A stretch of DNA of 64,000 nt from positions 124,001 through 188,000 of IMG/VR virus record IMGVR_UViG_3300027969_000039. One strand, 5' to 3'. The notes under the pieces were generated by a model that was not told where the DNA came from, ran no database searches, and saw nothing but the letters and a program-made list of their open reading frames with translations. A program made the position numbers and the translations under genes. The stretch's first letter is position 1, and every line of letters begins with the position of its first letter. This document shows, piece after piece, positions 17,617-55,034 of this stretch.

Positions 17617-17645
17617 AGTATAGCACAAAACCCATTTATTGTCAA
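17617..17645 (-). promoter_or_regulatory. Early promoter TTGACA-17-TATACT
   Basis: Variant of the repeated cassette. Confidence 0.8.
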
Positions 17646-18685
17646 CCGTAAGTTATATAGTCTCTTATATTGATTTTTCTTAAGGAATCTTGTTTTTTGA
17701 CAAAATTATCAAAATCAGTTTGATTGTCATTCCCACTAGCAATTAAGTTAGAGTAATGATTCAAAGTTGAATTTTCTTCTTTGGTAAATTTTTCTCTAGC
17801 TGCCAAAGTAAATGAATTTACACTAGTTATCAAAAGTTCTTTTTTGTCAGCTATGTTATTGAAACTATGACCTATATTATGTTCTTTCACAAAGTTTATA
17901 ATATTATCAAAATCATAAATATTCAATGCAGTAAGTGTGGTATATAAATTGATACTAACTGCTTCATAATTGCTTGCAAATTTTTTATATTTTTCTAATA
18001 CATCACAAAAAATATTCCACTTAGTGGGCCATCTCATATATTCTTGAACTTTTCCTACTCCATCTAGACTTATAGTAATTTGTATGGAGATACCTGTTTC
18101 AGCGATAGGAATTAACTCATCCATAAATGAGGTACAATTAGTATTAACTCTAATTGATTTTATATTTGGTGGCAAACTTTTTAATACTTCTTTTATATTT
18201 TTGCTATTGCTTGGTTCGCCACCAGTTAAGTCTAGTTGAGTTATTCTATCAATGGGCAATACTTTACTATTATAATAAGGAGTAGCATCTCTTATTTCAT
18301 AATTAGAAGATATTAAAGATGCTATCTTAGTACTAACATGCGGACTACAAAATTGACATGCAGTATTACAAATATTATCTAACATTAAATCTACTGTTAG
18401 ATAATCAATATCAGATTGCATTTTCATATCTTCGTTATAATACATCCTATCACTTTTTTGATTAATTTCTTCTTTTTCTTGGCACCGAACGCATTCTTTG
18501 GGAAATTTATTTTCTTTAAAAGTATTTTTTATATTTTTCATCCAGTTACTGTTTATCATTTCGCTATAACTAGAAAAAAAAGGTATATCGTTCATAACGC
18601 AACACCCACTGATCACTGCATTTGATCCAAACTCAACATAAGGTGGTGTAAGTTTAGCATAGTGATCAAGTCTAGCACAGTACAT
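17642..18685 (-). CDS. Radical SAM protein with N-terminal Cys-rich (twitch/SPASM-like) segment
   Basis: CNTACQFC, TGGEP, N-terminal C...CC...CxxC. Confidence 0.85.
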   Translation of the reverse strand: MYCARLDHYAKLTPPYVEFGSNAVISGCCVMNDIPFFSSYSEMINSNWMKNIKNTFKENKFPKECVRCQEKEEINQKSDRMYYNEDMKMQSDIDYLTVDLMLDNICNTACQFCSPHVSTKIASLISSNYEIRDATPYYNSKVLPIDRITQLDLTGGEPSNSKNIKEVLKSLPPNIKSIRVNTNCTSFMDELIPIAETGISIQITISLDGVGKVQEYMRWPTKWNIFCDVLEKYKKFASNYEAVSINLYTTLTALNIYDFDNIINFVKEHNIGHSFNNIADKKELLITSVNSFTLAAREKFTKEENSTLNHYSNLIASGNDNQTDFDNFVKKQDSLRKINIRDYITYG

Positions 18686-19272
18686 TACGGACGCTTTTTC
18701 AGTACAGAATCAGCTAATCCGTATGCTACTGCTTCGGTAGCACTCATAAAAAAGTCTCGTTCCATATCTTTAGCTAGTTCCTCGTATGTCTTACCAACAC
18801 TATTGTGGTCAACATAGATTTGTGTAAGACATTTTTTCATAGTTATAATTTCTCTGACTTGAATTTCCATGTCGGTAGCTTGACCTCGTGCGCCACCACT
18901 GGGCTGATGAATCATATGCCTTGCGTTGGGCAACATATAACGCTTACCTTTTGCTCCCGCTTGTGCAAGCAAACTACCCATACTACATGCTTGACCCATG
19001 ACGATGGTCATAACATCAGGCTTAATGAATTGCATACAATCGTAGATTGCCATACCAGCAGTTACACTACCACCTGGGCTATTGATGTAAACACTAATAT
19101 CCTTCTCGCCTTCGCTTTCTAAGTAAAGCAATTGGGCAACGACTAGATTTGCCATTTGATCGTGTACTTCGCCCTCAAGCAAAATAACACGGTCACGCAA
19201 CATGCGGCTGTATATATCATAACTACGCTCACCTTTGCTTGTTTGTTCTAAAACCATTGGGACTAAACTCAT
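18685..19272 (-). CDS. clpP: ATP-dependent Clp protease proteolytic subunit
   Basis: [31 protein letters not shown] (catalytic Ser), MIHQP, GQATD, ERDFFM. Confidence 0.97.
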
Positions 19273-19329
19273 ATACTTCCTTAAAATTAAAAGTATAACA
19301 GAAAGATTAGCTAGTTGCAACTATATTGG

Positions 19330-22894: not shown

Positions 22895-23116
22895 TCAAAA
22901 TAGTTTTTTGGGAAGACTTTGGTCACGTAAGTATTTTTGCCATCTGCGTTTGGCTAGACCTTTATCTACTTTACGCTGTATACTAGGCTTGACATATTGT
23001 TCCCGATCACGCAATTCCTGCAATAGGTTTTGGTCTGTAATCTTCTTTTTAAACTTCCGTAATGCTTTTTCAACATTTCCATCTGTTACAATAACTCGTC
23101 TTCCTTTAATACTCAT
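22895..23116 (-). CDS. rpsU: Ribosomal protein bS21
   Basis: [11 protein letters not shown]...ELR.RE.YVKPS..RK; LPKKLF C-terminus resembles betaproteobacterial S21. Confidence 0.92.
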
Positions 23117-36555: not shown

Positions 36556-37551
36556 TTAAAATAATCCTAGTTGTTTCCAATCAGAACGAATCTTAGCTTT
36601 GACTGCTGCCGGTAATGCAACATAGTCTAACTCATCTGCGGCTTTGTCGCCATTATTGAAAGCCCAATCAAAGAATGTTAGAGCAGTTTTAGATGCAGCA
36701 ACATCACCTGGCTTTACATAAACAAGAATGAATGTAGCACCACTGATAGGCCATGCTTCTTTGCCTGCTTGATTAGTCAATATCTGATAGTAACTCTTGT
36801 TCCAGTCAGCGTTAGCAGCGGCTGCTTTGAATGCATCTTCTGTAGGTGCTACCCAATTGCCTGCTGCATTCTGCACATTGACCCAGTTCATCTTGGCTTG
36901 TTTTACATAAGCATATTCAACATAGCCCAATGCCCCCGGAAGTTGGCGAACCATAGCAGAAACGCCTTCGTTACCCTTACCACCTGCTCCTGTTTTCCAA
37001 CTAACAGCAGTGCCTTCACCGATTGTATCTTTGAACTCTTTGCTGACTTTGCTCAAGTAGTTGGTCCAGATGAATGTTGTGCCACTTCCATCTGCACGGC
37101 GAACCACTGTGATAGCTTGATCGGGCAATGCTAGTGACGGGTTCAATGATTTGATAGCAGCATCATCCCAACGGGTGATCTTGCCCAAGAAGATATCAGC
37201 CATGACTGCACCTGTCAAGCGTAGTTGTCCGGGCTCAATTCCTTTGAGGTTGATTACCGGAACAACTCCACCAATTGCTGTAGGAAACTGAAACAAGCCT
37301 GATGCTTGAAGTTTGTCATCGGTGAGTGGCATGTCACTTGCACCGAACGTGACGGTCTTTGCTTCAATCTGCTTGATGCCTGCGCCTGAACCAACTGATT
37401 GATAGTTGATCTTGATGTTGGTAGACTTGTTATATTCACTCGCCCACTTTGCATATAACGGAGCCGGGAATGTTGCCCCGGCTCCTGTAATCTCTTGTGC
37501 TGATGCAGCGAATGCTATCACTGCCAATAATGTTGTAAACAGTTTTTTCAT
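36556..37551 (-). CDS. pstS: Phosphate ABC transporter substrate-binding protein
   Basis: GAGATFPAPLY, YQSVGSGAG, FGASD, RRADGSGTT, GKGNEGV, GYVEY, WPI; signal peptide. Confidence 0.97.
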   Translation of the reverse strand: MKKLFTTLLAVIAFAASAQEITGAGATFPAPLYAKWASEYNKSTNIKINYQSVGSGAGIKQIEAKTVTFGASDMPLTDDKLQASGLFQFPTAIGGVVPVINLKGIEPGQLRLTGAVMADIFLGKITRWDDAAIKSLNPSLALPDQAITVVRRADGSGTTFIWTNYLSKVSKEFKDTIGEGTAVSWKTGAGGKGNEGVSAMVRQLPGALGYVEYAYVKQAKMNWVNVQNAAGNWVAPTEDAFKAAAANADWNKSYYQILTNQAGKEAWPISGATFILVYVKPGDVAASKTALTFFDWAFNNGDKAADELDYVALPAAVKAKIRSDWKQLGLF

Positions 37552-37582
37552 GTAATCTCCTTGTGTGTTACACAAATATTTA

Positions 37583-38730: not shown

Positions 38731-38805
38731 TTAACGATTAGCAATATACATGGTAATTTCAAAACCGAAACGCATATCGCTTGCTTGAGGGGTAGTCCAT
38801 TTCAT
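38731..38805 (-). CDS. pqqA: PQQ precursor peptide PqqA (MKWTTPQASDMRFGFEITMYIANR), not in ORF track
   Basis: 24 aa, W-x-x-P leader, GFE-x-x-x-Y core, ANR end; AGGAG RBS; own terminator. Confidence 0.93.
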   Translation of the reverse strand: MKWTTPQASDMRFGFEITMYIANR

Positions 38806-38911
38806 AATTGTTCTCCTATATCAAATTGACATTGTATATATCGTTTATATGTGTTGCCATAACCTAAATAACATAGTGAAAAGTATGAATCTTTATTAGT
38901 GTTACTACTAA

Positions 38912-38934
38912 TAAGAAACCCGCCGAAGCGGGTT
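38912..38934 (-). terminator. Terminator of the tmRNA gene
   Basis: aacccgc-UUCG-gcgggtt followed by U-rich tail. Confidence 0.8.
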
Positions 38935-38939
38935 CTGGT

Positions 38940-39232
38940 TGTTTCTTTTATACAGTAAGTCCTACTGCACCTTAGCTTAAGCAGCTAAAGAATATAACTC
39001 ATCGTTTGCAGTTATGAAATTTGCTTGATTAACGGTCATCGCCTACCGTGTTGCCGTCTCTACTATCTACCTCTGTCGAAACCAGGGCAGGCCCGTCAGA
39101 AGCATACTCCTACAGATCGAAACTGATAAAGATAAGTGCGTACACCTATCCGAGTGAGTATGCTTATGGTGGACCTGGCGGGAGTCGAACCCGCGTCCAG
39201 AAGTCCTTCGCTTTGAAGGGATTACAACAATA
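38940..39232 (-). ncRNA. ssrA: Circularly permuted (two-piece) tmRNA, tag (A)ANDELYSLAA
   Basis: Acceptor piece with T-arm and CAGGUCC-ACCA ends at 39167 and precedes the coding piece starting GGGCCUG at 39094; G3.U70 pair; tag ORF 38977-39009; ends approximate. Confidence 0.92.
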
Positions 39233-39243
39233 ACTTCTATTTA

Positions 39244-39387
39244 TCACCAAGTTTTCTTAGCGATCCAATGTTGGATTTCTTGCACCCGCCATGCTAGTCC
39301 CCAAGGCAGTGTGAAAAATATCTTCTCACCACTAGGAGTATACATGGTCCGACCATCACTGTCAACCCCCATCAATCCTATAAACAT
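39244..39387 (-). CDS. 47-aa hypothetical protein (likely start MFIGLMG)
   Basis: GAGGAG RBS. Confidence 0.55.
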   Translation of the reverse strand: MFIGLMGVDSDGRTMYTPSGEKIFFTLPWGLAWRVQEIQHWIAKKTW

Positions 39388-39722: not shown

Positions 39723-41930
39723 TTATACACTTTTAAATTCTAGTTTGTCAAATTTAATGGGTGTATAATGTTTTGGAGATGTAGTATGTGAATTAGGAAC
39801 AGCTACGTTATATCTTTCAGGATTTGCCCATGAACCAGTATCTTGCCATTTATGTTTAAATGAGAAATCAATTGTACTATTTAAATGTCTTTCTTCTGCA
39901 ATTAACTCCATGAATTCTTCGTGATTTCTGCCACCGTCTCCCCACTTTGGTTTAGCTAGTTTTCTAGCACGAATGGATGCATTAGATTGTTGTCTAGAAT
40001 AATCTTGTGCAAAAAACGGAGATTTTGCCGATAAAGGATCTACTGGATCGATAATAGTGACCGGTTGTTGATAGTAATAATCAAAATCTGCTTCCCAATT
40101 ACCTTCATCATCTATTGTAAAATTATGATTAGCCCAATAAGGGCCGGCATTTCTTTCACCAAATTCTATCATATCTAAATCTTGATCAAATTTAATTGTA
40201 GCAGTAAATCCTCCTCGTGTACGCCATAGTATTCTAAACAATGTAAATATTTCATTTACTAAACTATCAGCAAAGGGATTGATGTCAGGATGTATTATAT
40301 TGTAATCAAAGTTTTCATATTCAATTTCTTTTTGCATTGTAGGATCATCAAACACAATTTTATAATGATGCATTGGCAAATTACCACGCTGCGGGATTGA
40401 AACTGATTTTTCAGTTAACAAATGCTGCAAGAATACTGCAAATACTTTCATCCTAACCATGACATGAAATTTAGAAAGTTTGAAATCTTTAGTTATCCAT
40501 CCACCTGCATACTTGTGTGCTAGTAAATTAAACTTATCAGGATTTTGTCCAACAATAGTATCCATACCTAAACCAAATCCAAATCCAGCAGCAATATTAG
40601 CTATGTTGTTATTTCTATTACGCCATAAAAAAGTCATTGTATCTGCAAAATTTTGATATGATTCTGTTGGGAACCCTACTATCCAATTGGTAAAAGCATT
40701 TACTCCAGTTTTCTTCCCATCTATAAAGTTTTGTTCCATTTCAGCAATAGTAACACCTTTGTCAATATCATCTAGTACAGGCTGACTTCCAGACTCTATG
40801 CCATAGTTTAACATATGACAACCTGAATCAGCTAAATCTTGATAGAATGCTAAATCCATTCGTCCATCACATCTTGCATATCCAGTCCAATGAATTTTCA
40901 TACCTTTAGCAATGACTCCTTTGCAGAAGGCTCTAAGTTCATTTAGATTTCCATTTACCAAACTATCAATAAACCAAACTATGTCAGTTCCTTTTTCATA
41001 GTATAATGTTTCTATTTCTTTTAGAATATCAGTAGCCATGCGTTGACGATATTTCCAAAAATGTGTTTCTTCACAAAAGGTGCATTTTGCAGTACAACCT
41101 CTACTCAGTTCACTATTAACTCCATTTGGAAATTCATATTCATTGAAATCAAAATTAGAATAATCAGGCATAGGCAAGTCATTCAAATTTAATCTTTGTT
41201 CTTCAGGTTGTGCTAGCTTTTGAACCTTGTCGTGAATTATTCCGTTTTCAATTTCTTCTAAAATTTCTAAAAGAAGTAATTCACCTTCCCCATTGATAAC
41301 ATAATCAAACATATTATCATCTTCTCCACTCCAAGCATGTGGTTCTTGGCAAGGTCTAATATTAGGACCACCTACTAGTATTTTAATATTTGGCAATCTT
41401 TCTCTTAATTTTTTCACCATATACTTAACTGGTTCTGCATTTGTATAGTACATAGTAAATCCTATAACGTCAGGAGGATTTTTAACAATCTGTTCTATGT
41501 ATTTGTTTAATAAAATGCTCAGATGCGGATGTATATCACTATGGTAGTCTTTTGCTAACCATTTCCAATCTCTTGCGCCGTCCCACGGGTCGAAATCAAT
41601 AAGTCCATCATTTCGCCATTTGTGAGATAAGTTATATGCCTTTACATTCAAATCAATACAATTAGATTCATATCCAGCGCCTTTTGCAACCGCAGACAGT
41701 CTTGCAAGATTGAACGGTGGAAACATTGGTGCCCATTCTGGACAAAGTATTAATAATAACTTTGTTTTTCTATACGCATAGTTGATATCAATAGTAGTTA
41801 CATTTTTTTGAACTTTAGTTTTTGCATAAGGTGCAATAGCTTGCAACATAGCCAGATGCTTAATATCAGCGTCAGGCTCTAGTGGTCTTGATTCCACTAT
41901 CTTTTTTTTATATTGATATAATTCACTCAT
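39723..41930 (-). CDS. Cobalamin-binding radical SAM enzyme
   Basis: PPFNLARL, VGGP, GEGE, SRGCTAKCTFC, GIESGS, IVGFPTE. Confidence 0.9.
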   Translation of the reverse strand: MSELYQYKKKIVESRPLEPDADIKHLAMLQAIAPYAKTKVQKNVTTIDINYAYRKTKLLLILCPEWAPMFPPFNLARLSAVAKGAGYESNCIDLNVKAYNLSHKWRNDGLIDFDPWDGARDWKWLAKDYHSDIHPHLSILLNKYIEQIVKNPPDVIGFTMYYTNAEPVKYMVKKLRERLPNIKILVGGPNIRPCQEPHAWSGEDDNMFDYVINGEGELLLLEILEEIENGIIHDKVQKLAQPEEQRLNLNDLPMPDYSNFDFNEYEFPNGVNSELSRGCTAKCTFCEETHFWKYRQRMATDILKEIETLYYEKGTDIVWFIDSLVNGNLNELRAFCKGVIAKGMKIHWTGYARCDGRMDLAFYQDLADSGCHMLNYGIESGSQPVLDDIDKGVTIAEMEQNFIDGKKTGVNAFTNWIVGFPTESYQNFADTMTFLWRNRNNNIANIAAGFGFGLGMDTIVGQNPDKFNLLAHKYAGGWITKDFKLSKFHVMVRMKVFAVFLQHLLTEKSVSIPQRGNLPMHHYKIVFDDPTMQKEIEYENFDYNIIHPDINPFADSLVNEIFTLFRILWRTRGGFTATIKFDQDLDMIEFGERNAGPYWANHNFTIDDEGNWEADFDYYYQQPVTIIDPVDPLSAKSPFFAQDYSRQQSNASIRARKLAKPKWGDGGRNHEEFMELIAEERHLNSTIDFSFKHKWQDTGSWANPERYNVAVPNSHTTSPKHYTPIKFDKLEFKSV

Positions 41931-44900
41931 ATATATTTTTAAATTTTTCTTTTAACCAAACCCAATCATAGCTTAGTCGTAATTGTGTTAAGTCACCGTT
42001 GACTTGTTCATAATATTGTACAGCATGTTGGGCACCTTGTAAACTATATTCGGCAAAGTCACCAATTGCTGTTGTTAGCCATGTATTTAATCGTATTTCA
42101 TTTTCTTCCGTTTTGGATGCTTTTAACTTAATACATTCACGGAAAGCTGTACGCCATGCATCCCACTCACTACTGTTATACATACCAATACCACAATTAA
42201 CAGGAACAACTTCATGCTCACTATCCATTGTAAAGTCTAACCCAGTACCAAAGTTCTCTAATGTAAGTTTTTTGTTGTTAGCAACGATAGCTTGATGACC
42301 ATATACTAACCCGTTCACTGGATTGGTAGCATGAAATATATAGTGCTTAGGTATCTGTAATCTGTCCGGTTGCCAGTTAAAATCAAACTTTGCTGATACT
42401 TTTAATTTAGCGTTTACTAAAAAATACCATGGTGTATTGCTACTATTTGCCGCAGCGTGTTGACTTTTTACACGACCATTTATACCGTCTATTCTAGTAA
42501 TTTTGTTTGGTAATCCTTGTGTTATCTTTAATAGATGTTCGTAATTTCTATCAGCACTAGTTTCACCGTTACTAAAGAACACAATGTCCAATGGGTTAGA
42601 TTCTATAAGTTTATTATTCTTAATAATGTATGGATAATCGTATAACTCTTTCTTTACATACTGTTTAGCTTCTTTTGGAACTATAATTCTTGTTCCACCT
42701 GTACTAGTAATAGTAATATTTTTAGTTTCATTGCTCCATAGATTCATTGGTTCAACATCAACGGCATTGATGTTTTTATTATCTTCAGTCACAAACACAG
42801 CGTATGGAAAATTAAAATCAGTATTTACGCTAGAAGCATGTGTATCATTTTCTGTAATAATGATTGGAGCCGGCAATCGGTTTACTCTTTGATGTTGATT
42901 ATAGTTAATCTTCCCATACTCTTCCAAAGAGTTCATATTATCAATCAATGTTCTAAGTTTATTAACATCAATTAAAAATGTGTCACCAAACTTTTGCCTA
43001 TCGCTAGGAAATACATGTAAGTGTTCTTTAGCAAATGGGTCGCAAATATAAGTAAAATCAAAATCTTTATAATCACATACTGTACTAGCTACCCACACAT
43101 AATGTTCTTTTTTTACTGGGAGTTTATCTAGCATACTCTTAAAAGTATTCAAATAACTAGTTTCATACTTAATAATTAAGTTATTGATATTAGACAAGTC
43201 TTTATTGTCATGGTCGATATAAACTATATCATACAATACATTAGACGCTTTGGCTTTTATAGTTTTAACAAAATTCAAGTTAGAAAGATGTTCAATAATT
43301 TTTATATATTTGGTATCTTGCGGGAATGTTTCTTTATTAACTAAGTAAGTGGTACCCCAATGACTCCACTGAGTGCCGAACACATGCACCATCTTCATTT
43401 GCCATGGGTTAGGATAATATTCAAAATCAAAATCAGTGTAATCTAATTCACTATTGAGTATCCAACATAAATTACTGGTAGCACGATTGATGCAGCGATT
43501 TATTGTATCGACCCAACTGTTTAAATATCTTGTCTTTATTATATTTGGGAATCTAATCTTAAGTTTTTCAAATCTAGTTTGTGATTCAATATTACTTCTA
43601 TCAACAAAGAACATATCAATTTTATTTTTTATTTGTTCTTCTACCCAATTAAACTCAGTATTTCCTCTGAGCCACATTACAGAGTTTACTAAAAAAGTTT
43701 GTGTTTTTGTGTTTTCACTTGAACCAAACACTTGAATATACTGTGACTGCTCAATACTAGGTTTCCAATCAAAATTAAAATTAGTATAATCTATGTGAGG
43801 ATTTAATGCCCAAAATATTTCGTCAGGATGTTGTTTAATCAAATCTTCTAATGAAGTGGTCAACAAATATTTAGGATAAGATTTTTCAATTTCAATTGGC
43901 TTTTCTAAAACTATTCTTTCCATATACACTGATTCACCAGTGTTATCAGGGGTCAAATATCTAGGACCGTCATCCCTATCTAATATTGTACCAAATCTAT
44001 AAACAAACGGTGGGCTGGTATCATCGGGATGCCAGCTGAAATCAAAGTTACTAACATCTATACCATCAGATACTTTCCAATTAACCATTGTAGCTAATCG
44101 CACAGATTTTATATCATCTATATATTTTATTTCAGTTGCATCTTCAACTACATATCTTGGGCCATTTGTTTTTTGATGTTGTGTTCCAAATTGGTATATG
44201 TATGGTTTTTCATTAGTGTTGGGGTGCCAGCTAAAATCAAACTGACTAATATCAATAGTATTTGGAATGATCCAATTTGGTGATATTTCTGTGGTAACCA
44301 CTGTTGCCCTTAAGGTGTCTATATATTTAATTTCAGATGCGCCTTCAACTTCATATCTCAATCCACCTGTACTTTGATGCTGTGTTCCAAATTCATATAT
44401 TAATGGAGGGTCAGTATCATCAGGGTGCCATGAGTAATCAAAATTATCAATAGGAAGAAGTTCTTTCCAGTTTTTTTTATTAGGCAATCTTTTTGCTTTT
44501 TGAACGCTTACATATTTTATTTCAGTGGCATTTTCAACTATATATTTTGGTCCACCTGTCTTTTGATGTTGTGTACCAAATTGATATATGTATGGGGGTG
44601 CATCTGGGTGGGGAACCCATGTAAAATCAAAATTTTCTGTGTCTATGTCAGACGGTATGCTCCAGTTATTTTTATTTGCTTTGGTACATGCTTTGATATC
44701 TTCTACGTAACTAAATTGTGTAGCATCTTTAACTACATATTTTGGACCACCGCGGTTATTCCATATAGTAGCAAATTCGTAAATATATGGTGGACTAGTT
44801 GGATTAGGTCTCCAACTGAAATCAAACTTAGTAGCATCAATATTATCAGGTATTTCCCAATTAGTTTGATCAGGCAATAATTCAACTTCATCGAACATAT

Positions 44901-45984
44901 ATTTTCGTTTAGTTGCCCCTGGACAATAATAAGCTAATACAGGTTCAACCGCTGCTTCATTCCACTTGCTGCCCCATACATACACAAACGGAGGTTCGGT
45001 ATCATCTGGGTGCCATGAGTAATCAAAATTAGTTACTGGTAGTATTTCTTTCCAGTTTTCCCTATTAGGCAATCTTTTTGCTTTTTGAATATCTATATAT
45101 TTTATGTCTGTGGCATCTTTAACTATATACCTTGGCCCACCTGTCTTTTGCCATTGAGTACCAAATTCGTATATATATAGAGGACTAGTTGGATTAGGTC
45201 TCCAACTAAAATCAAATTCAGCAGTGTCAATGTTATCAGGTATTTCCCAATTAATTTTATTAGGCATCAAGTCTAATAAAGTATCAAGATATTTTCTGTT
45301 AGTTGCGTTAGGACAATAATAAGCTAATACAGGTTCAACCGCTGCTTCATTCCACTTGCTACCCCATACATACACAAACGGAGGTTCTCTCGGGTCAGGT
45401 CTCCATGACAAATCAAACTTAGACTTATCAATAGGTATTATTTCTTTAAAATTTTTGCTGGGTAATAATTCAACTACTTGATCCATATACTTACGATCAA
45501 TATCATGCGAATAAGGAGCATGATATTCTAGTACTGGTTGTAATTCTACCGGATTCCATTTATTACCCCATACATATACATATGGAGGGCTAGATGGATC
45601 TGGATGCCAACTGAAATCAAATTTAGTTTCATCAACTAAATCTAGCAATACCCAATTGTCGTTTTTTTCGTTTTTTCTTTTTAGTGGATCAACATCAGCA
45701 CGATATATAATTATTTCACTATATTGTTTAGGGCATAACCATGTGCCACTATCTTTTTGATGAAAGCTAGGCCATACATTGTTATGTTCTTCTGCCCAAA
45801 CATCCTCATCGGGCAAGAATTCAAAGTCAAAATCCCAATCAAAATTACGATAATCACAATGTTCGTTGATTATCCAAAAATGTTCCGTGGTACATTGATT
45901 TCTAGCATCTTCTATTGAAGTTGCAAATCTTTCTCTTGGGTGAATATTGGGTTTAGAGCCGTAATAAAAGACATCTCGTAGCAT
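41923..45984 (-). CDS. 1353-aa repeat protein with C-terminal glycosyltransferase-like domain
   Basis: About 10-12 FDFSW(H/R)P...PYIY.FG modules; C-terminus (RIDGING...H.AAA...AWRTAFREC.K) resembles 57610-58563. Confidence 0.7.
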   Translation of the reverse strand: MLRDVFYYGSKPNIHPRERFATSIEDARNQCTTEHFWIINEHCDYRNFDWDFDFEFLPDEDVWAEEHNNVWPSFHQKDSGTWLCPKQYSEIIIYRADVDPLKRKNEKNDNWVLLDLVDETKFDFSWHPDPSSPPYVYVWGNKWNPVELQPVLEYHAPYSHDIDRKYMDQVVELLPSKNFKEIIPIDKSKFDLSWRPDPREPPFVYVWGSKWNEAAVEPVLAYYCPNATNRKYLDTLLDLMPNKINWEIPDNIDTAEFDFSWRPNPTSPLYIYEFGTQWQKTGGPRYIVKDATDIKYIDIQKAKRLPNRENWKEILPVTNFDYSWHPDDTEPPFVYVWGSKWNEAAVEPVLAYYCPGATKRKYMFDEVELLPDQTNWEIPDNIDATKFDFSWRPNPTSPPYIYEFATIWNNRGGPKYVVKDATQFSYVEDIKACTKANKNNWSIPSDIDTENFDFTWVPHPDAPPYIYQFGTQHQKTGGPKYIVENATEIKYVSVQKAKRLPNKKNWKELLPIDNFDYSWHPDDTDPPLIYEFGTQHQSTGGLRYEVEGASEIKYIDTLRATVVTTEISPNWIIPNTIDISQFDFSWHPNTNEKPYIYQFGTQHQKTNGPRYVVEDATEIKYIDDIKSVRLATMVNWKVSDGIDVSNFDFSWHPDDTSPPFVYRFGTILDRDDGPRYLTPDNTGESVYMERIVLEKPIEIEKSYPKYLLTTSLEDLIKQHPDEIFWALNPHIDYTNFNFDWKPSIEQSQYIQVFGSSENTKTQTFLVNSVMWLRGNTEFNWVEEQIKNKIDMFFVDRSNIESQTRFEKLKIRFPNIIKTRYLNSWVDTINRCINRATSNLCWILNSELDYTDFDFEYYPNPWQMKMVHVFGTQWSHWGTTYLVNKETFPQDTKYIKIIEHLSNLNFVKTIKAKASNVLYDIVYIDHDNKDLSNINNLIIKYETSYLNTFKSMLDKLPVKKEHYVWVASTVCDYKDFDFTYICDPFAKEHLHVFPSDRQKFGDTFLIDVNKLRTLIDNMNSLEEYGKINYNQHQRVNRLPAPIIITENDTHASSVNTDFNFPYAVFVTEDNKNINAVDVEPMNLWSNETKNITITSTGGTRIIVPKEAKQYVKKELYDYPYIIKNNKLIESNPLDIVFFSNGETSADRNYEHLLKITQGLPNKITRIDGINGRVKSQHAAANSSNTPWYFLVNAKLKVSAKFDFNWQPDRLQIPKHYIFHATNPVNGLVYGHQAIVANNKKLTLENFGTGLDFTMDSEHEVVPVNCGIGMYNSSEWDAWRTAFRECIKLKASKTEENEIRLNTWLTTAIGDFAEYSLQGAQHAVQYYEQVNGDLTQLRLSYDWVWLKEKFKNIYE
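44788..45387. repeat. Near-identical internal DNA repeats at 390-bp (130-codon) offset
   Basis: 44921-44997 vs 45311-45387 differ at one base; about 44791-44862 matches about 45181-45252. Confidence 0.85.
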
Positions 45985-46006
45985 CTTATATTTAAACAGT
46001 TACTGT

Positions 46007-47074
46007 TTATGTGAAATATTTTTCAATGTTTTTAGTTGTGCTATAATCAGTTGACGAATGGAAATGCTGTTTGTTATGTTCTACAATTTCTTTTATATTA
46101 GTTTGCCATTCTATCCATTCTTCAGCTGGTTTAGAAATTAATCTTTGTATTTCTTTAAAGACTGCTATCAATCTTTCTTCATTATTTTCAATAGAATCAT
46201 ATGATTCATTAATGAATGGACTAAATGTTTTGTACCCTATTTTTCTCAGAACTTTTAATGTGTGGGGTCTACCTAACATAACAAAGGGATGCATACAACC
46301 TAAACATTTGAATGTTTTTTCAGTTATAAAAGTTGAATCAACTCCATAATTTGGTTCAGTATAAAACAATGTCTCAGTTATTATACTGAAATAACTATCA
46401 TCAAAATATTTTATGTCATCAGGTATAATATCAATTGGATTACTTCTATCTGTAGTGATATTAAGCCTTAAAGGAAATTTATTACGATTCTTTTTTATAT
46501 TAACATATTCATCAGATAATATATCCCAATTGAGTCCTGGCCCTTCAAATGAATAATATCCTTTGTCTATGTAGGAATACATCAATTCTAATAAATCTAG
46601 TCTATGCTTTCTAGGCATTTTATTAAAACATAGAAATACTTTTTCTTTTTCTTTTATATTATATTCAACTGGCAAAGAACTTAATATTGAATAATTTAAA
46701 CTAAACCAATGTGCGTTAACACATATTACTGAAATTTTGTTTTTCCAATTGTATTGTTTATATATTTTTTCATACACTTCTAGCCCATCTGATGCACCAC
46801 ATACATAAATTAAATCTTTAGAATCTATATTATTTTTTAGTAAACTAGCAATATCTTGAATTTTTTGAAGCATCTGCAATACTATTCCTTCACCTATCAG
46901 ATAAAATAAAAACTTAGTTTTTCCTTCTTTTTTTGCTTGTAGTATGTCTTTTACAATTATTTCATTGCTAGTAGTAGGAAATGCGGTATGTAAGTGCGAA
47001 TCAATAATATGTATATTATCTATATGATTTTGTAATTCTGGCCATATTTTTAGTAATAGCGTAGTAGGGGTCAT
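46007..47074 (-). CDS. Putative glycosyltransferase-like protein (ET...TEK family)
   Basis: FLCFN..PR.HR, YFSIITET...FITEKTFK...HPF...GYKTF...I.ESYD. Confidence 0.55.
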   Translation of the reverse strand: MTPTTLLLKIWPELQNHIDNIHIIDSHLHTAFPTTSNEIIVKDILQAKKEGKTKFLFYLIGEGIVLQMLQKIQDIASLLKNNIDSKDLIYVCGASDGLEVYEKIYKQYNWKNKISVICVNAHWFSLNYSILSSLPVEYNIKEKEKVFLCFNKMPRKHRLDLLELMYSYIDKGYYSFEGPGLNWDILSDEYVNIKKNRNKFPLRLNITTDRSNPIDIIPDDIKYFDDSYFSIITETLFYTEPNYGVDSTFITEKTFKCLGCMHPFVMLGRPHTLKVLRKIGYKTFSPFINESYDSIENNEERLIAVFKEIQRLISKPAEEWIEWQTNIKEIVEHNKQHFHSSTDYSTTKNIEKYFT

Positions 47075-48267
47075 TTAAATTTCCTAGTATTACCATAATG
47101 CTTAACTACATGTCCTAACGTTGGAAGCATTTCGCGCCATGGATCAATAAAAGTATAAATTCGTTTTGTTTCTTTTTCCCAATCAATATCTCTTACCCAT
47201 TGCTCCCAGTAACCAATTAAGTACACCTCTGTACTATCTGTTTTTAAATCTAGATCACCGGTATTAACATCATAGTAGTTAACTATTCCGCCGTACTGTT
47301 CTATATAATGTCCTACTAACATACTACCACTTCCGTTAGTATACGGCACACTAGGCTTATATGCTTTTCCTATAATAGTAACATTCTTGCCGTACTGTAA
47401 ACATTTTTTAGCCATGCGATCTGCTTGTACTTCTCGTGCTTTCATTATAGCATCAAATAAGTCATACCCTAAATCTAATCTATCGGCTAGATAACGCAAT
47501 GCAATATTATCCCTTGGATGACATGCACCACCATCTCCCATGCCAGCTTTCATGTATGCAGGCCCAGTGATTCTATGTGTACTTTTTGATAATGCGTTAG
47601 TTACAACATCTACATTAATATTGCCATTTGTTTCAGCAACATCTTGTATCATATTAACTAATGCAACTTTTGTAGATATAAACGTATTATAGAAAATTTT
47701 AATAGACTCGGCTTCATCCCATGTTCCTACTTCATACCTAGGATCATTCTCTATAAACACTTTGTAGAACTCAATCAATTCTTTTGCGTCTCCAGTAATA
47801 CTACCATCATCAGTGCCAATAATAACCATTTCAGGATTTACCATATCCCACTTAGTAGTACCCATAGCTATAAGATATGGGTTGTAAATAAATCTAGCAT
47901 TAGTGATACAAGGTTCTAATATATTACGAACTGTCCCCGGTAACACTGTACTAATCAATACAACTAATTGGTTTTTATTTACATACTTATTAACTTCCAA
48001 TAAGATGTTAGTAACTATAGAATAGTCAAAATCTTTATTAGGCAAATGACTAGTTGGAGTCTCGCCGCCATATATGGGGTCATGCGCGGTGGGTGCTGCA
48101 ATAAAGATAATATCTCTACCTTGTACTGCTTCTTCAATTGTTTTTTTCATAGGAAAAGCAGGATTTCTGTTCTCTACATCATAACCTACTACATCATAAT
48201 GTTGTGCCATAACTTCAGCACACTCTTGCCCTAATTTACCTACCCCAATCATTGATACTGTTGTCAC
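47071..48267 (-). CDS. UDP-glucose/GDP-mannose dehydrogenase family protein
   Basis: GVGKLG Rossmann motif, STV.PGT, YNP, AE..K..YN, GGACHPRD, AYKP. Confidence 0.9.
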   Translation of the reverse strand: MTTVSMIGVGKLGQECAEVMAQHYDVVGYDVENRNPAFPMKKTIEEAVQGRDIIFIAAPTAHDPIYGGETPTSHLPNKDFDYSIVTNILLEVNKYVNKNQLVVLISTVLPGTVRNILEPCITNARFIYNPYLIAMGTTKWDMVNPEMVIIGTDDGSITGDAKELIEFYKVFIENDPRYEVGTWDEAESIKIFYNTFISTKVALVNMIQDVAETNGNINVDVVTNALSKSTHRITGPAYMKAGMGDGGACHPRDNIALRYLADRLDLGYDLFDAIMKAREVQADRMAKKCLQYGKNVTIIGKAYKPSVPYTNGSGSMLVGHYIEQYGGIVNYYDVNTGDLDLKTDSTEVYLIGYWEQWVRDIDWEKETKRIYTFIDPWREMLPTLGHVVKHYGNTRKFK

Positions 48268-48299
48268 AAAATTTCCTTATTTAATATAATGGTTAAAAT

Positions 48300-48312
48300 T
48301 ATTTAGTAAATA
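48300..48312. promoter_or_regulatory. Back-to-back TAAATA late-type promoters
   Basis: tatttag-taaata between divergent genes. Confidence 0.55.
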
Positions 48313-48316
48313 ATAG

Positions 48317-50239
48317 ATGAAGAAAAAGAAAATTAGTTTCGTACAACCCAATTTTCAGCAAGGACCCAAAGAGTTTAATGCTTATTATTTGCCATATTCA
48401 GCCGGGGTGATTTTAAGTTACGCATTGAATGATGAAAAAATCAAAGAATCTTGGAAATTACATCACTTAGTATGGCGCAGGGAACCTATTGATGAATTAG
48501 CATTAAAACTCAGCACCAGTGACCTAGTAGCATTCTCGACTTATGTCTGGAACCATCGTTACAATTATAAATTAGCACATATGATAAAGGTGCTTAATTC
48601 AAAGTGTTTAATTGTTTTTGGTGGACCAGAACCTGCTATTGAAGATACTAAACTGTTTGAGAAAGAACCGTTTATGGATTTAGTAATCAAGATGGAAGGA
48701 GAAGTGACATTCAAGCGTATATTAGAAGATTTTGATTCGGACTATACGCACATACCTGGATTGTTAATTAACTCTCCTAATGGAATGATTAATACCGGAG
48801 ATCCTAACCGCATAAATGAGTTAGATGAGATTCCTAGTCCATACTTGACAGGTATATTTGATAAAATAATTTCAGAAAATCCTAACATAATATGGAACGC
48901 TACACTAGAAACAAATCGCGGTTGTCCCTATGCATGTACATTTTGTGACTGGGGAAGTCTTACCTATAACAAAGTAAAGAAGTTTGATATGCAAAGGGTA
49001 TATGATGAATTAGATTGGATTGGAGAACATTGTGGATTCGTCACTATCACCGATGCTAACTTTGGAATGTTTGTAGAGCGTGACAATGCTATTGTAGATA
49101 AATTAATTGAAGTGCAAAAGAAGTGGGACAATTTAAAAAGTTTCTCAATGACATGGGCAAAAAATCAAAAGAATGAAGTAGTTGATATTGTCAAAAAACT
49201 AATAACTGAATCTCCTAATTTTGGGCAAGGACTTACCGTTAGCGTACAGAGCATGGATCAAGATGTACTAGAAAACATAAAACGCAGGAATCTTGACCAA
49301 CACAAGATTGACGAAATCTTTGCACTATGTGATAAGAATAATATACCAGTATATACAGAATTGATATTAGGTTTACCCGGTGAGACAGTAGAATCATGGA
49401 AAAATGCTTTCTGGAAAATATTCCGTGCGGGCAATCATAATGGAATTAACATTCTACAATGTCAATTACTAGAAAATGCTGAGATGAATTTATTGCAGAA
49501 AAAACTATACAAGTTAGAATCAGTTGCTGTATATGATTATATGAGTGGTAGTTACGGTGACAAAGATTTAAATGAAAGCATTGATGTAGTAGTATCAACA
49601 AAAACTATACCGCATGAATTAATGTTAGATACTCTAGTATGGTCTAGTTTTATACAAACATTTCATATCAATGGGTTGACAACGTACATAGCTAGATACT
49701 TAGCTAAACAAGATATAGACTATTCTGTGTTCTATGAAAATTTATATGAATGGATTAAAAAAGATTCATGGTTTAGATTACAATTCGCAGATACACGCAG
49801 TTATTTTGCTAACTGGATGACCAATGGTAGAATCGATCACCCTAAGATTGGTAACATTGAAGTATTTGGGTGGAACCTTATGCACAGAACTACTCTGTAC
49901 ATGGTCAAAGACAAAATGATTAATTATGTATTTGAATCATTAGATGAATTTTTGCGAGAAACTTATAATATTGAATCTCCTGTTAGAGAACAACTATTAC
50001 AATTCCAAAGAAACTATGTTATTGATTACAGAGACCTAGGTGCTCTGCCACGATATCAAAGTTTTGATTATGATTTTTTAGGATATATTCAAGACAACAG
50101 TAATATAAAAAATAGTGCAATTTATAAATTTGACACTACTGAAGATAAAGATATGAGCCAAGACCGTTTCTTAGAAAATATGTATTTTGGTAGAAAAAGA
50201 AACTTTGGAAAAACTATTATTTCTCGTGCATCAGTTTAG
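48317..50239 (+). CDS. Cobalamin-binding radical SAM enzyme
   Basis: LPYSAG, STYVWN, GGPE, EGE, ETNRGCPYACTFCDW, DANFG, ELILGLPGET. Confidence 0.9.
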   Translation: MKKKKISFVQPNFQQGPKEFNAYYLPYSAGVILSYALNDEKIKESWKLHHLVWRREPIDELALKLSTSDLVAFSTYVWNHRYNYKLAHMIKVLNSKCLIVFGGPEPAIEDTKLFEKEPFMDLVIKMEGEVTFKRILEDFDSDYTHIPGLLINSPNGMINTGDPNRINELDEIPSPYLTGIFDKIISENPNIIWNATLETNRGCPYACTFCDWGSLTYNKVKKFDMQRVYDELDWIGEHCGFVTITDANFGMFVERDNAIVDKLIEVQKKWDNLKSFSMTWAKNQKNEVVDIVKKLITESPNFGQGLTVSVQSMDQDVLENIKRRNLDQHKIDEIFALCDKNNIPVYTELILGLPGETVESWKNAFWKIFRAGNHNGINILQCQLLENAEMNLLQKKLYKLESVAVYDYMSGSYGDKDLNESIDVVVSTKTIPHELMLDTLVWSSFIQTFHINGLTTYIARYLAKQDIDYSVFYENLYEWIKKDSWFRLQFADTRSYFANWMTNGRIDHPKIGNIEVFGWNLMHRTTLYMVKDKMINYVFESLDEFLRETYNIESPVREQLLQFQRNYVIDYRDLGALPRYQSFDYDFLGYIQDNSNIKNSAIYKFDTTEDKDMSQDRFLENMYFGRKRNFGKTIISRASV

Positions 50240-51424
50240 TTGAGTTAAGAATGTAGTTTGATTTAATAACACTTTTTGATTATATTCACAGATTGGTTTA
50301 ACGTTATTTAAGAATTCTGATAACTCATTGGGTTTCAATTCGCACAATCTTTTAATTTCTGCTACTACCTTTAACATCCTTTTAGAGTCATTTAATTCTA
50401 AATCATAACTTTCGTCTATCCATGGGGAGAATGTTTTGTATCCTAACTCTCTTAATTTAATCAAAGAATGGGGAGGAGATACTAACAATGCCGGGTGTTT
50501 ATTTGCTATAGTTTTAAAAACTTTTTCAGTTAAATGCCTACCAAACCCATGGTAACTAACACTTGGTGATCCATCTTCAAACGTATCACTGGTATAATAA
50601 TTAGTCTCAGACACTACACTAAAATAAGTATTTTCATATAGGTAATCAGTAGAGGAATCTAGTATTGCTCGATTTGTAACTAAATCGTTTGTATCGATAT
50701 ACAAATTTGGCATGTTTAATATCTGTTGTTCGTTATTCTTCAAAAGATTAACTATCTCAGGAGTATTTGCGTGACAGCTTAACATACTACTCCAAACAGT
50801 TTGCCATGATCTGTTGTCATCACTTGATGCCATGCTAACATACCCTTTGTCTAGCAAGTTATTAGCATACAATAAACTAACCAGCACTGGGCGATGCAAT
50901 CTCCATCTTCTATTAAAGTTGATAAATTTTTTATTGTATACTTTATCTTTTAGTGTGTTTAGTTCAGTATATCCATCTACAGACATTATCAATTGTTTGT
51001 TAGATTTTATGTCAAACTCCATTATGCGTGTCCATACACATTTCATTTCTTCTACATTATACAATTTGCTAAATTTTCTAATTTCAAATAATATATCTGC
51101 GGACTCTGACATTAAAATAATTTGACTAGGTGGTAGTTTAGCTGTTACAATCAATCCTTCATATACACCTTGAACAACATTGTGAAATGATTCATGGCTA
51201 TTATTTACAACTAATTTAATTTCTCTATTTCTTATTCGTTGTATGTCTCTTGCAGGAATTAAATCTTCAATCGGAAACATTTGAAAAACTGACATATGTT
51301 TAAATTCATAGTAGTAGTAATCACTATCTACAAAATTCAAGTGCTGCCACCATACTGACCCACTACGCAATTCTTTAATACTATCAAGATAGTAAAATGC
51401 ATTGGTGTTTAACATCATTCCCAT
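50231..51424 (-). CDS. Putative glycosyltransferase-like protein (paralog of 46007-47074)
   Basis: FINFNRRWR.HR, YFSVVSET...LTEKVFK...HP...GYKTF. Confidence 0.55.
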   Translation of the reverse strand: MGMMLNTNAFYYLDSIKELRSGSVWWQHLNFVDSDYYYYEFKHMSVFQMFPIEDLIPARDIQRIRNREIKLVVNNSHESFHNVVQGVYEGLIVTAKLPPSQIILMSESADILFEIRKFSKLYNVEEMKCVWTRIMEFDIKSNKQLIMSVDGYTELNTLKDKVYNKKFINFNRRWRLHRPVLVSLLYANNLLDKGYVSMASSDDNRSWQTVWSSMLSCHANTPEIVNLLKNNEQQILNMPNLYIDTNDLVTNRAILDSSTDYLYENTYFSVVSETNYYTSDTFEDGSPSVSYHGFGRHLTEKVFKTIANKHPALLVSPPHSLIKLRELGYKTFSPWIDESYDLELNDSKRMLKVVAEIKRLCELKPNELSEFLNNVKPICEYNQKVLLNQTTFLTQLN

Positions 51425-51425
51425 A

Positions 51426-55000: not shown

Positions 55001-55034
55001 AATATTTTTAATTCATTCATAATATTTTTAATTC
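54990..55034. repeat. Exact 20-bp tandem duplication at a gene junction
   Basis: attcattcataatattttta twice plus a partial copy. Confidence 0.9.

What the first reader, a model, noticed from the sequence alone, without database searches (positions are those of the whole stretch)
38912..39245. Circularly permuted two-piece tmRNA in a phage
Seen on the minus strand: the 3' acceptor half (GCGGG-UUCGACU-CCCGC T-arm, CAGGUCC-ACCA, ending 39167) comes before the 5' half (GGGCCUG...UUUCGAC, starting 39094). The acceptor stem pairs 7/7 with G3.U70. The 72-nt intervening segment has complementary ends (AAGCAUACUC/GAGUAUGCUU). Cross-piece helices CAGAGGU/ACUUCUG and ACGGCAA/UUGUUGU form. The tag is ANDELYSLAA*, with a TAAATA motif upstream and a UUCG terminator downstream. 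Known: permuted tmRNAs occur in alphaproteobacteria, some cyanobacteria and a betaproteobacterial subgroup. Inference: a compact phage version, possibly an independent permutation, expressed late.
Basis: partly seen in the sequence, partly recalled or inferred. Interest (0 to 1): 0.8.

Follow-up and report, generated by a model that had tools for sequence, protein, structure and literature searches.

The report
Two-piece tmRNA on freshwater jumbo phage
A large freshwater phage carries a genuine, probably working, split-gene ("two-piece") copy of the ribosome-rescue RNA tmRNA, but it belongs to the known betaproteobacterial type, and such genes have already been reported on phages, so it is a solid but ordinary find.

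Summary
ARAGORN calls a permuted tmRNA (38886-39259, minus strand, tag ANDELYSLAA). Rfam gives beta_tmRNA 155.6 bits (cut-off 84) and tmRNA_permuted 148.4 bits (cut-off 47).

An alignment of 31 homologues from viral contigs recovers the split acceptor stem, T-arm, both cross-piece helices and the spacer stem, with compensatory changes in 16 of 33 pairs.

The carrier is an uncultured freshwater phage of at least 231 kb with no close deposited relative. The gene is not a new permutation. It matches the beta-type model over its full length. More than 120 viral contigs carry the same gene arrangement, and most of those sampled are beta-type too. The cultured jumbo phage XacN1 also carries a beta-type copy. 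Phage two-piece tmRNAs were published in 2022.

"Compact" is wrong: the spacer is about 43 nt longer than the model consensus. "Late" expression is untested, although GATAAATA belongs to a motif that recurs upstream of genes in the window.

Likely mechanism: tRNA-type processing into two base-paired RNAs, alanylation, and tagging of stalled proteins for ClpXP. The phage encodes ClpX and ClpP itself. No SmpB gene was found in the window.

Side finding: a pqqA gene is repeatedly linked to these phage tmRNAs.

The parts
38912..39245 (-). Whole permuted tmRNA (ssrA) gene, from the promoter-like motif to the terminator
   Evidence: ARAGORN tmRNA* 38886-39259; Rfam RF01850 at 38912-39282 and RF04321 at 38977-39229
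39337..39365 (-). Sigma-70-type promoter candidate TTGACA-17-TATACT (11/12), inside a 47-aa upstream ORF, about 100 nt before the gene
   Evidence: consensus match only, function not shown
39238..39245 (-). GATAAATA motif 7 nt before the first paired base; overlaps the upstream ORF's stop codon (TGA, 39246-39244)
   Evidence: ATAAATA is enriched in intergenic DNA of the window and lies at the same distance in some relatives
39224..39230 (-). P2a 5' strand UUGUUGU (acceptor piece), pairs with 39051-39057
   Evidence: compensatory changes in columns 12-17/207-212
39205..39219 (-). Local hairpin CCUUC-AAAGC-GAAGG in the acceptor piece, where the beta-type model expects further cross-piece pairs
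   Evidence: Rfam marks non-canonical pairs here
39198..39204 (-). P2b 5' strand ACUUCUG, pairs with 39069-39075
   Evidence: columns 37-43/184-192; pair 37/192 is CG 13, AU 10, UA 4, GC 1
39178..39194 (-). T-arm GCGGG-UUCGACU-CCCGC
39167..39177 (-). Acceptor 3' strand CAGGUCC plus encoded ACCA (3' end of the acceptor piece)
39095..39166 (-). 72-nt intervening segment: 10-bp closing stem, inner 9-bp hairpin, and a 5-nt leader CUGAC before G1; predicted to be removed
   Evidence: fold -30.4 kcal/mol, z -4.9; the closing stem is at least 10 bp in 76 of 92 unique spacers of relatives, with 76 different strand sequences
39088..39094 (-). Acceptor 5' strand GGGCCUG (5' end of the coding piece; predicted RNase P site before 39094)
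39069..39075 (-). P2b 3' strand CAGAGGU
39051..39057 (-). P2a 3' strand ACGGCAA
39032..39049 (-). PK1-region hairpin ACGGU-AGGCGAUG-ACCGU, a block highly conserved in the phage clade
   Evidence: stem positions covary (ACGGU/ACCGU, ACAGU/ACUGU, AGGGU/ACCCU); pseudoknot partner not tested
38977..39009 (-). Tag reading frame: resume codon GCA, ANDELYSLAA, stop UAA
38912..38935 (-). Intrinsic terminator (8-bp stem, UUCG loop, U-rich tail)
38731..38805 (-). pqqA-like 24-codon gene immediately downstream (linked neighbour, not part of the RNA)
   Evidence: Pfam PqqA 40.4 bits against a cut-off of 21.1; linked to the tmRNA in 19 of 121 loci
18685..19320 (-). Phage-encoded ClpP (probable downstream partner: protease for tagged proteins)
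   Evidence: Pfam CLP_protease 262.7 bits
23113..24321 (-). Phage-encoded ClpX with N-terminal zinc finger (probable unfoldase that recognises the tag)
   Evidence: Pfam AAA_2 107.5 bits and zf-C4_ClpX 51.1 bits; Atlas nearest clusters are ClpX

Best explanation
This is a functional ssrA gene of the betaproteobacterial-type, circularly permuted (two-piece) class, carried by an uncultured freshwater jumbo phage of at least 231 kb. Shown: the gene order is acceptor 3' half, spacer, acceptor 5' half, then the mRNA-like part, and all helices of the tRNA-like domain are present and covary in relatives. Inferred mechanism: one precursor of about 330 nt is transcribed from a promoter just upstream and ends at the terminator at 38912-38935. 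The two acceptor halves pair. The 72-nt spacer folds on itself through its 10-bp closing stem, leaving a small internal loop. That loop exposes the 5-nt leader before G1 to RNase P, and the 3' side after the encoded CCA to host tRNA 3'-end trimming enzymes. The products are an acceptor piece of about 65 nt and a coding piece of about 180 nt, held together by the acceptor stem and two 7-bp helices. Host AlaRS charges the RNA through G3.U70. With SmpB (presumably the host's) and EF-Tu it enters stalled ribosomes. Translation resumes at GCA and adds ANDELYSLAA. The C-terminal LAA end delivers tagged proteins to ClpXP, and the phage encodes both ClpX and ClpP. The likely benefit is keeping ribosomes free and recycling truncated proteins while host mRNA is being degraded. 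The gene was most likely captured long ago from a bacterium with beta-type tmRNA and has since been inherited within a lineage of aquatic phages. It is not a new permutation.
For: Identity: ARAGORN and Rfam RF01850 155.6 bits / RF04321 148.4 bits. Structure: RNAalifold on 31 viral homologues recovers the acceptor stem, T-arm, P2a, P2b and spacer stem, with 16 of 33 pairs showing changes on both sides. The spacer closing stem is at least 10 bp in 76 of 92 unique spacers, while shuffled spacers never exceed 9. The spacer fold has z -4.9. The canonical two-piece fold costs only 4.4 kcal/mol more than the MFE. Selection on the tag: 118 of 121 regions get a permuted call; among 72 unique tags, 52 end in LAA, 64 end in AA and 61 start with AN. 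Lineage: 15 of 18 sampled loci score best with the beta model, and XacN1 also does. Phage carrier: the identical gene lies on 231-kb and 212-kb IMG/VR contigs; window proteins hit phage families and only distant large phages. Inheritance within a lineage: neighbouring metallophosphoesterase and glycosyltransferase genes are shared at 56-87% identity in about 10 tmRNA loci. Partners: ClpP and ClpX are in the window. Precedent: phage two-piece tmRNAs and tmRNA plus SmpB in huge phages.
Against: There is no direct evidence of transcription, processing, alanylation or tagging. RNA-library contigs cover only the conserved blocks and look like relatives. No SmpB gene was found among the window ORFs scanned; the remaining 170 kb or more of the genome was not examined. 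Unconstrained cofolding does not give the canonical structure, and its dimer gain equals that of shuffled controls. The middle of helix P2 expected by the beta model is replaced by a local hairpin. The bacterial donor was not identified: the clade's PK1 block occurs in no chromosomal ssrA of 185,579 species genomes, only in two phage-like MAG contigs.
Confidence: 0.85

Rival explanations
1. An independently arisen, fourth permutation of tmRNA that evolved within phages.
For: The clade-specific PK1 block is absent from all bacterial species representatives scanned. The spacer is longer than in the beta model, and the mid-P2 region differs.
Against: The gene matches the beta-type model over positions 1-331 at 155.6 bits, including lineage-specific 3' hairpins. 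The same subtype is best for 15 of 18 sampled loci. The permutation breakpoint and helix order are those of known two-piece tmRNAs.
Confidence: 0.05
2. Not a phage gene: a bacterial chromosomal ssrA on a misclassified contig, or a host fragment kept as an attachment site.
For: tmRNA genes are common integration sites. The window also has host-like genes (ClpXP, PstS).
Against: The gene is complete, not a 3' fragment. No ribosomal or housekeeping context was seen. Many ORFs have no family or only phage families. No near-identical bacterial sequence was found. Homologues sit in more than 120 low-GC viral contigs, some 200-380 kb long, and in the cultured phage XacN1.
Confidence: 0.04
3. A decoy or regulator rather than a tagger: the RNA titrates host SmpB or senses ribosome stalling, as proposed for the TLD-only RNA of mycobacteriophage DS6A, without productive tagging.
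For: No phage SmpB was found in the window. There is a precedent of a TLD-only phage RNA that inhibits host tmRNA.
Against: The tag frame, resume codon, LAA end and stop codon are conserved across 72 different tags, which a decoy would not need. The phage carries ClpX and ClpP.
Confidence: 0.07
4. A decaying, non-functional relic of an old capture.
For: No expression data exist for this phage.
Against: Compensatory changes maintain every helix. The gene is identical in independent samples. The terminator and tag are intact.
Confidence: 0.03

Closest known systems
Betaproteobacterial two-piece tmRNA (Rfam RF01850, beta_tmRNA)
   Same: The gene order, acceptor stem with G3.U70, T-arm, P2 helices, PK1-region hairpin, AND-type tag ending in LAA and 3' hairpins are the same. 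The model match is full length at 155.6 bits.
   Different: It is carried by a phage, not a betaproteobacterium. The spacer has 60 nt where the model has 17. The middle of P2 is replaced by a local hairpin. The PK1 block is not found in any bacterial species genome scanned.
Two-piece tmRNAs of marine phages (OM43 phage Melnitz, pelagimyophages, cyanophages; Buchholz et al. 2022, PMC9004378)
   Same: These are phage-borne permuted ssrA genes in aquatic, low-GC phages of streamlined hosts, with a proposed role in maintaining translation or recycling proteins.
   Different: Melnitz's gene is alpha-type and carries a glutamine riboswitch. The gene here is beta-type, no riboswitch family was reported by Rfam in the window, and blastn finds no similarity outside the tRNA-like domain in deposited phages.
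tmRNA of the cultured jumbo phage XacN1 (Xanthomonas citri, AP018399)
   Same: It is a permuted, beta-type tmRNA on a jumbo phage: ARAGORN tmRNA*, beta_tmRNA 107.8 bits. It shares 82% identity over the 73-nt acceptor-piece match.
   Different: The tag differs (ANANTFDYALAA), the mRNA-like part is diverged, and the phage and host are different. No feature is annotated over it in the deposited record.
Caulobacter two-piece tmRNA (alpha-type; Keiler, Shapiro and Williams 2000, cited)
   Same: It is the experimental model for how a permuted precursor is cut into acceptor and coding pieces that stay base-paired and tag proteins.
   Different: It belongs to a different lineage (RF01849) and is a bacterial chromosomal gene. 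Its processing is demonstrated, whereas here it is inferred.
One-piece phage tmRNAs (mycobacteriophage Bxz1 group, Bacillus phage G; PMC4131195)
   Same: These are phage-encoded ssrA genes. Bacillus phage G shares a 40-nt T-arm match.
   Different: They have the standard, unpermuted gene form.

Membership tests
tmRNA (any form) | tRNA-like domain: 7-bp acceptor stem with G3.U70, T-arm, 3' CCA | tested here: met
   Read directly, modelled, and covarying. G3.U70 conservation in relatives is partly imposed by my search pattern.
tmRNA (any form) | Short tag reading frame that starts at an Ala resume codon, ends in hydrophobic residues plus AA, and is followed by a stop codon | tested here: met
   GCA...UAA = ANDELYSLAA*; the pattern is conserved in 72 unique tags of relatives
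tmRNA (any form) | Pseudoknot PK1 upstream of the resume codon | tested here: inconclusive
   The hairpin at 39032-39049 is present and its stem covaries. The second pseudoknot stem could not be tested because the block is nearly invariant.
tmRNA (any form) | Dedicated partner protein SmpB available | tested here: inconclusive
   No SmpB was found among the window ORFs scanned with Pfam or PHROGs. The rest of the phage genome and the host are unknown.
tmRNA (any form) | Alanylation and trans-translation activity | not testable with these tools
   Needs biochemistry or proteomics
Permuted (two-piece) tmRNA, RF04321 | The acceptor 3' half with CCA lies upstream of the acceptor 5' half in one gene, and the score is above the curated cut-off | tested here: met
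   148.4 bits against a cut-off of 47; ARAGORN permuted call
Permuted (two-piece) tmRNA, RF04321 | The precursor is cut into two RNAs that remain base-paired | tested here: inconclusive
   RNA-library contigs lie on both conserved blocks and not on the spacer, but they are short, 92-99% alike and run into unlike sequence, so they come from relatives. The canonical paired fold lies within 4.4 kcal/mol of the MFE.
Beta-type two-piece tmRNA, RF01850 | Full-length match to the lineage-specific model above its cut-off | tested here: met
   155.6 bits against a cut-off of 84, model positions 1-331. Scores for the alpha and cyano models are hidden by the tool's clan filter.
Beta-type two-piece tmRNA, RF01850 | Resident in a betaproteobacterial chromosome | tested here: not met
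   It lies on phage contigs. This concerns where the family lives, not the RNA's structure.
T4-type late promoter | TATAAATA at about -10 and a phage late sigma factor (gp55 type) | tested here: inconclusive
   GATAAATA is a 7/8 match. Exact TATAAATA occurs once against 11 expected. ATAAATA is enriched in intergenic DNA, 10 observed against 3.7. No late sigma factor was searched for beyond the window.

The most novel reading that the evidence does not exclude
Aquatic phages maintain their own long-lived clade of beta-type two-piece tmRNA that no sequenced bacterial species carries in the same form. In this reading it has a conserved spacer stem as its processing signal, is repeatedly linked to a pqqA gene, and is co-encoded with ClpX and ClpP. 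Together these would form a phage-run tag-and-degrade module that reshapes the proteome of (probably methylotrophic) hosts, rather than a passive copy of a host gene.
Probability: 0.2. Interest if true: 0.6.

Novelty: new member of a known kind. Interest (0 to 1): 0.3.

Why it matters
The find adds a freshwater jumbo-phage example to the known set of phage-borne two-piece tmRNAs. The conserved, covarying spacer stem is a concrete candidate for the processing signal of permuted tmRNA precursors, a step that is poorly characterised outside Caulobacter. A phage that encodes tmRNA, ClpX and ClpP together offers a natural system to ask whether phages use trans-translation to keep ribosomes free or to direct proteolysis during infection. 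For annotation, the finding is routine: standard tools detect it.

Tried and rejected
1. Megablast and blastn of the gene, and of 24 kb of the window, against 50,697 deposited phages found no close relative, only T-arm matches.

2. My single genome-collection scan used the clade's PK1 block to find the bacterial donor. It gave only two MAG contigs, both phage-like, so the donor lineage stays unidentified. The exact-match pattern would miss bacterial relatives that differ by one base.

3. Reads from RNA libraries: contigs from four runs cover only the conserved blocks and derive from relatives. This is uninformative about processing in this phage.

4. Unconstrained two-strand MFE folding does not reproduce the canonical structure, and its dimer gain equals that of shuffled controls. 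I rejected it as evidence either way. The constrained fold is near-optimal.

5. No SmpB was found in the window ORFs.

6. The T4 late promoter reading was considered. The exact consensus is depleted, while the shorter motif is enriched between genes, so the question stays open.

7. Sharkady and Williams 2004, which defines the beta lineage, is not held.

8. Host inference from PstS and ClpX Atlas neighbours gave only "Pseudomonadota" or mixed taxa.

9. I did not run the count of structure pairs, because it needs a long typed structure string. I used RNAalifold and my own counts instead.

Full report
**1. The observation**

- T-arm at 39194-39178.
- CAGGUCC-ACCA ending at 39167.
- A 72-nt spacer at 39166-39095, whose ends AAGCAUACUC and GAGUAUGCUU are complementary.
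- GGGCCUG starting at 39094, which pairs 7/7 with the upstream strand and gives G3.U70.
- The helices ACUUCUG/CAGAGGU and UUGUUGU/ACGGCAA.
- The frame GCA...UAA encoding ANDELYSLAA at 39009-38977.
- A UUCG-loop terminator at 38935-38912.

ARAGORN reports one gene in the whole window, a permuted tmRNA at 38886-39259 with that tag. Rfam reports beta_tmRNA at 155.6 bits (cut-off 84, E 5.8e-48, model 1-331 of 331) and tmRNA_permuted at 148.4 bits (cut-off 47).

**2. The carrier**

- The window has 30-42% GC and is about 93% coding.
- It encodes an ATP-dependent ligase, dCMP deaminase, Hsp20, a metallophosphoesterase and PstS.
- It also encodes ClpP, ClpX, a glycosyltransferase, a UDP-glucose dehydrogenase-like protein and at least eight radical-SAM enzymes.
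- Many further ORFs have no family or only phage families.
- Nothing in 50,697 deposited phages is close. Proteins reach only 30-40% identity to large and jumbo phages.
- The identical tmRNA region lies on two IMG/VR contigs of 231 and 212 kb (L055 and L118).
- Freshwater metagenome runs hold 94-96% of the sequence's words.

I conclude that this is an uncultured freshwater jumbo phage.

**3. Relatives and structure**

ARAGORN calls a permuted tmRNA in 118 of the 121 regions. Among 72 unique tags, 52 end in LAA and 61 begin with AN. All but two loci have 31-47% GC.

I aligned 31 sequences. RNAalifold, run without guidance, recovered P2a, P2b, the T-arm, the acceptor stem and a stem closing the spacer. 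Of 33 pairs, 16 show changes on both sides. For example, acceptor pairs 4-6 switch between AU/UA, GC/UA and GC/CG. One caveat applies: G1-G3 and U70-C72 were fixed by my search pattern, so their invariance is not independent evidence.

The spacer stem is the clearest new detail:
- In 76 of 92 unique spacers it is at least 10 bp long.
- It starts 0-2 nt after ACCA and ends 4-6 nt before G1.
- It uses 76 different strand sequences.
- Shuffled spacers never exceed 9 bp.
- The window's spacer folds at -30.4 kcal/mol, z -4.9.

Unconstrained cofolding of the two predicted pieces prefers local hairpins. Enforcing the 26 canonical pairs costs only 4.4 kcal/mol.

**4. Which lineage**

The beta-type model matches end to end. 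In a sample of 18 loci, 15 score best with the beta model at 94-158 bits. One (L076) scores best with the alpha model, and two reach only the general permuted model. The cultured jumbo phage XacN1 carries a beta-type permuted tmRNA as well. This argues against an independent permutation.

A scan of 185,579 bacterial and archaeal species genomes for the clade's PK1 block found only two MAG contigs. Both have phage nuclease and endolysin genes beside the tmRNA. So this subtype appears to live on phages, although an exact-match scan cannot exclude slightly different bacterial relatives.

Neighbouring metallophosphoesterase and glycosyltransferase genes are shared at 56-87% identity in about ten tmRNA loci. 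This indicates inheritance within a phage lineage.

**5. Expression**

Two candidate promoters exist.
- A near-consensus sigma-70-type promoter lies at 39365-39337, inside a 47-aa upstream ORF.
- GATAAATA lies at 39245-39238, 7 nt before the first paired base.

Exact TATAAATA occurs once in the window against 11 expected. ATAAATA is depleted overall (20 against about 42 expected from base composition). Yet 10 copies lie in the 7% of intergenic DNA, against 3.7 ± 1.9 in shuffles. These usually sit 15-35 nt before a start codon and are often preceded by G or C.

Among 100 unique upstream regions of relatives:
- 15 have ATAAATA within 20 nt of the gene.
- About 20 have a sigma-70-like -10 element ending within 10 nt. 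Two of these (L004, L023) are perfect or near-perfect consensus promoters.
- Others follow directly on an upstream ORF's stop codon.

A promoter immediately upstream is therefore plausible. Its class and timing are not established, so "late" is an analogy with T4, not a result.

**6. RNA data**

Contigs from four RNA-type libraries lie on 38997-39104 and 39159-39239 and not on the spacer. They are 31-64 nt pieces, 92-99% alike, with loose ends that run into unlike sequence. They therefore come from related tmRNAs. This is compatible with the model but does not test it.

**7. Mechanism**

Shown: the anatomy and its conservation.

Inferred from established tmRNA biology (the Caulobacter two-piece model, cited):
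- The precursor folds and the spacer hairpin presents a small internal loop.
- RNase P cuts before G1 (39094), and host nucleases trim to the encoded CCA (39167).
- Two RNAs of about 65 and 180 nt stay paired.
- AlaRS charges the RNA via G3.U70.
- SmpB and EF-Tu deliver it to stalled ribosomes.
- The tag ANDELYSLAA is added, and ClpXP degrades the product.

The phage encodes ClpP (262.7 bits) and ClpX with its zinc finger, about 15-20 kb away. No SmpB gene was found in the window. Huge phages with both tmRNA and SmpB are known.

**8. Comparison with what is known, and novelty**

- Permuted tmRNAs define three bacterial lineages, and RF04321 merges them.
- Phage tmRNAs have been known since the Bxz1 group and phage G.
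- Buchholz et al. 2022 reported a two-piece tmRNA in OM43 phage Melnitz. They counted 53 two-piece forms among 133 unique phage tmRNAs, 50 of them aquatic.

The present gene is thus a new member of a known kind. It differs from the bacterial beta consensus in three ways: a longer, strongly structured spacer; a local hairpin in place of mid-P2 pairs; and a clade-specific PK1 block. It is not more compact.

**9. Host**

A methylotroph of the Methylophilaceae is my best guess, at about 0.4.

For:
- The freshwater origin and GC near 37%.
- The pqqA gene beside the tmRNA (Pfam 40.4 bits) and the many radical-SAM genes.
- These match the Lake Baikal phages predicted to infect Methylophilaceae.
- One search's tmRNA tree puts the OM43 (Methylophilaceae) host on the lineage it relabels from Betaproteobacteria to Gammaproteobacteria.

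Against:
- XacN1 shows that this RNA type also travels with a Xanthomonas phage.
- The Atlas neighbours are uninformative.

**10. Verdict**

The evolutionary and timing inferences are not supported or not testable here. Interest is modest.

Noticed in passing
window 38731-38805 (-); also L105/L074, L107, L090, L014/L063, L085, L089/L030, L005 and others: A 23-24 codon pqqA-like gene (Pfam PqqA 40.4 bits) lies about 110 nt after the tmRNA terminator. A pqqA-like ORF sits on the same strand as the tmRNA in 19 of 121 loci. It is usually right after the terminator and twice right before the gene, and the peptide sequences differ between loci. A phage pqqA was reported once before, in Lake Baikal methylotroph phages (PMC7678222). 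Its linkage to ssrA is unexplained.
   Followed up: partly
window 39723-58563 (mostly - strand) and 17642-18685: There is a dense cluster of at least eight radical-SAM enzymes. Two are large B12-binding ones (735 and 640 aa) and two have SPASM domains. They lie next to a 1353-aa ORF with no family, a UDP-glucose dehydrogenase-like gene and a glycosyltransferase. This could be a peptide-maturation pathway acting on the PqqA-like peptide, or a sugar or DNA modification pathway.
   Followed up: partly
window 18685-19320 (-) and 23113-24321 (-): The phage encodes both ClpP and a full ClpX with zinc finger. This is the protease pair that degrades ssrA-tagged proteins in bacteria. ClpX homologues (50-52% identity) also lie near the tmRNA in L062 and L086.
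   Followed up: partly
window-wide; e.g. 2323(+), 8706(+), 63020(-), 34073(-), 30178(-), 20873(-), 39244(-): ATAAATA is depleted in coding DNA but concentrated between genes: 10 of 20 copies lie in 7% of the sequence, against 3.7 expected. These copies are typically 15-35 nt before a start codon. This is probably this phage's own promoter element. Exact TATAAATA is strongly under-represented (1 against 11 expected).
   Followed up: partly
L036, L033, L079, L050, L025, L029, L049, L054, L039, L040, L068, L080, L019: A subgroup of viral permuted tmRNAs encodes unusually long tags of 27-31 residues, for example ANADTFDFSAMSFTGNTV...FALAA. That is about three times the usual length.
   Followed up: no
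spacers of L025, L040, L096, L065: In 4 of 92 unique spacers the intervening segment contains a Shine-Dalgarno-like sequence and a short ORF. Two of these encode 22-23 residue hydrophobic peptides. This suggests the excised spacer can be a mini-mRNA in some phages. The window's spacer has no such ORF.
   Followed up: no
L121 (JBDNIA010000294.1) and L122 (CALMJT010000228.1): Two MAG contigs, binned as Crocinitomicaceae and Alteromonadales, carry this phage-type tmRNA beside a phage nuclease and endolysin genes. They are probably phage contigs placed in bacterial bins.
   Followed up: partly
L123 = AP018399.1 36528-38000 (Xanthomonas phage XacN1): XacN1's tmRNA is permuted and beta-type (tag ANANTFDYALAA), although its host genus is, to my knowledge, a one-piece tmRNA lineage. 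No feature is annotated over it in the deposited record.
   Followed up: partly
L098 1-6300: A viral locus with about 17 tRNA genes arrayed around its permuted tmRNA.
   Followed up: no
window 36556-37575 (-), 12921-13379 (-), 22323-22787 (-): The window carries auxiliary genes typical of aquatic phages: a PstS phosphate-binding protein, a cysteine-dioxygenase-like protein and Hsp20. PstS is shared at 56-62% identity with L003 and L102.
   Followed up: no
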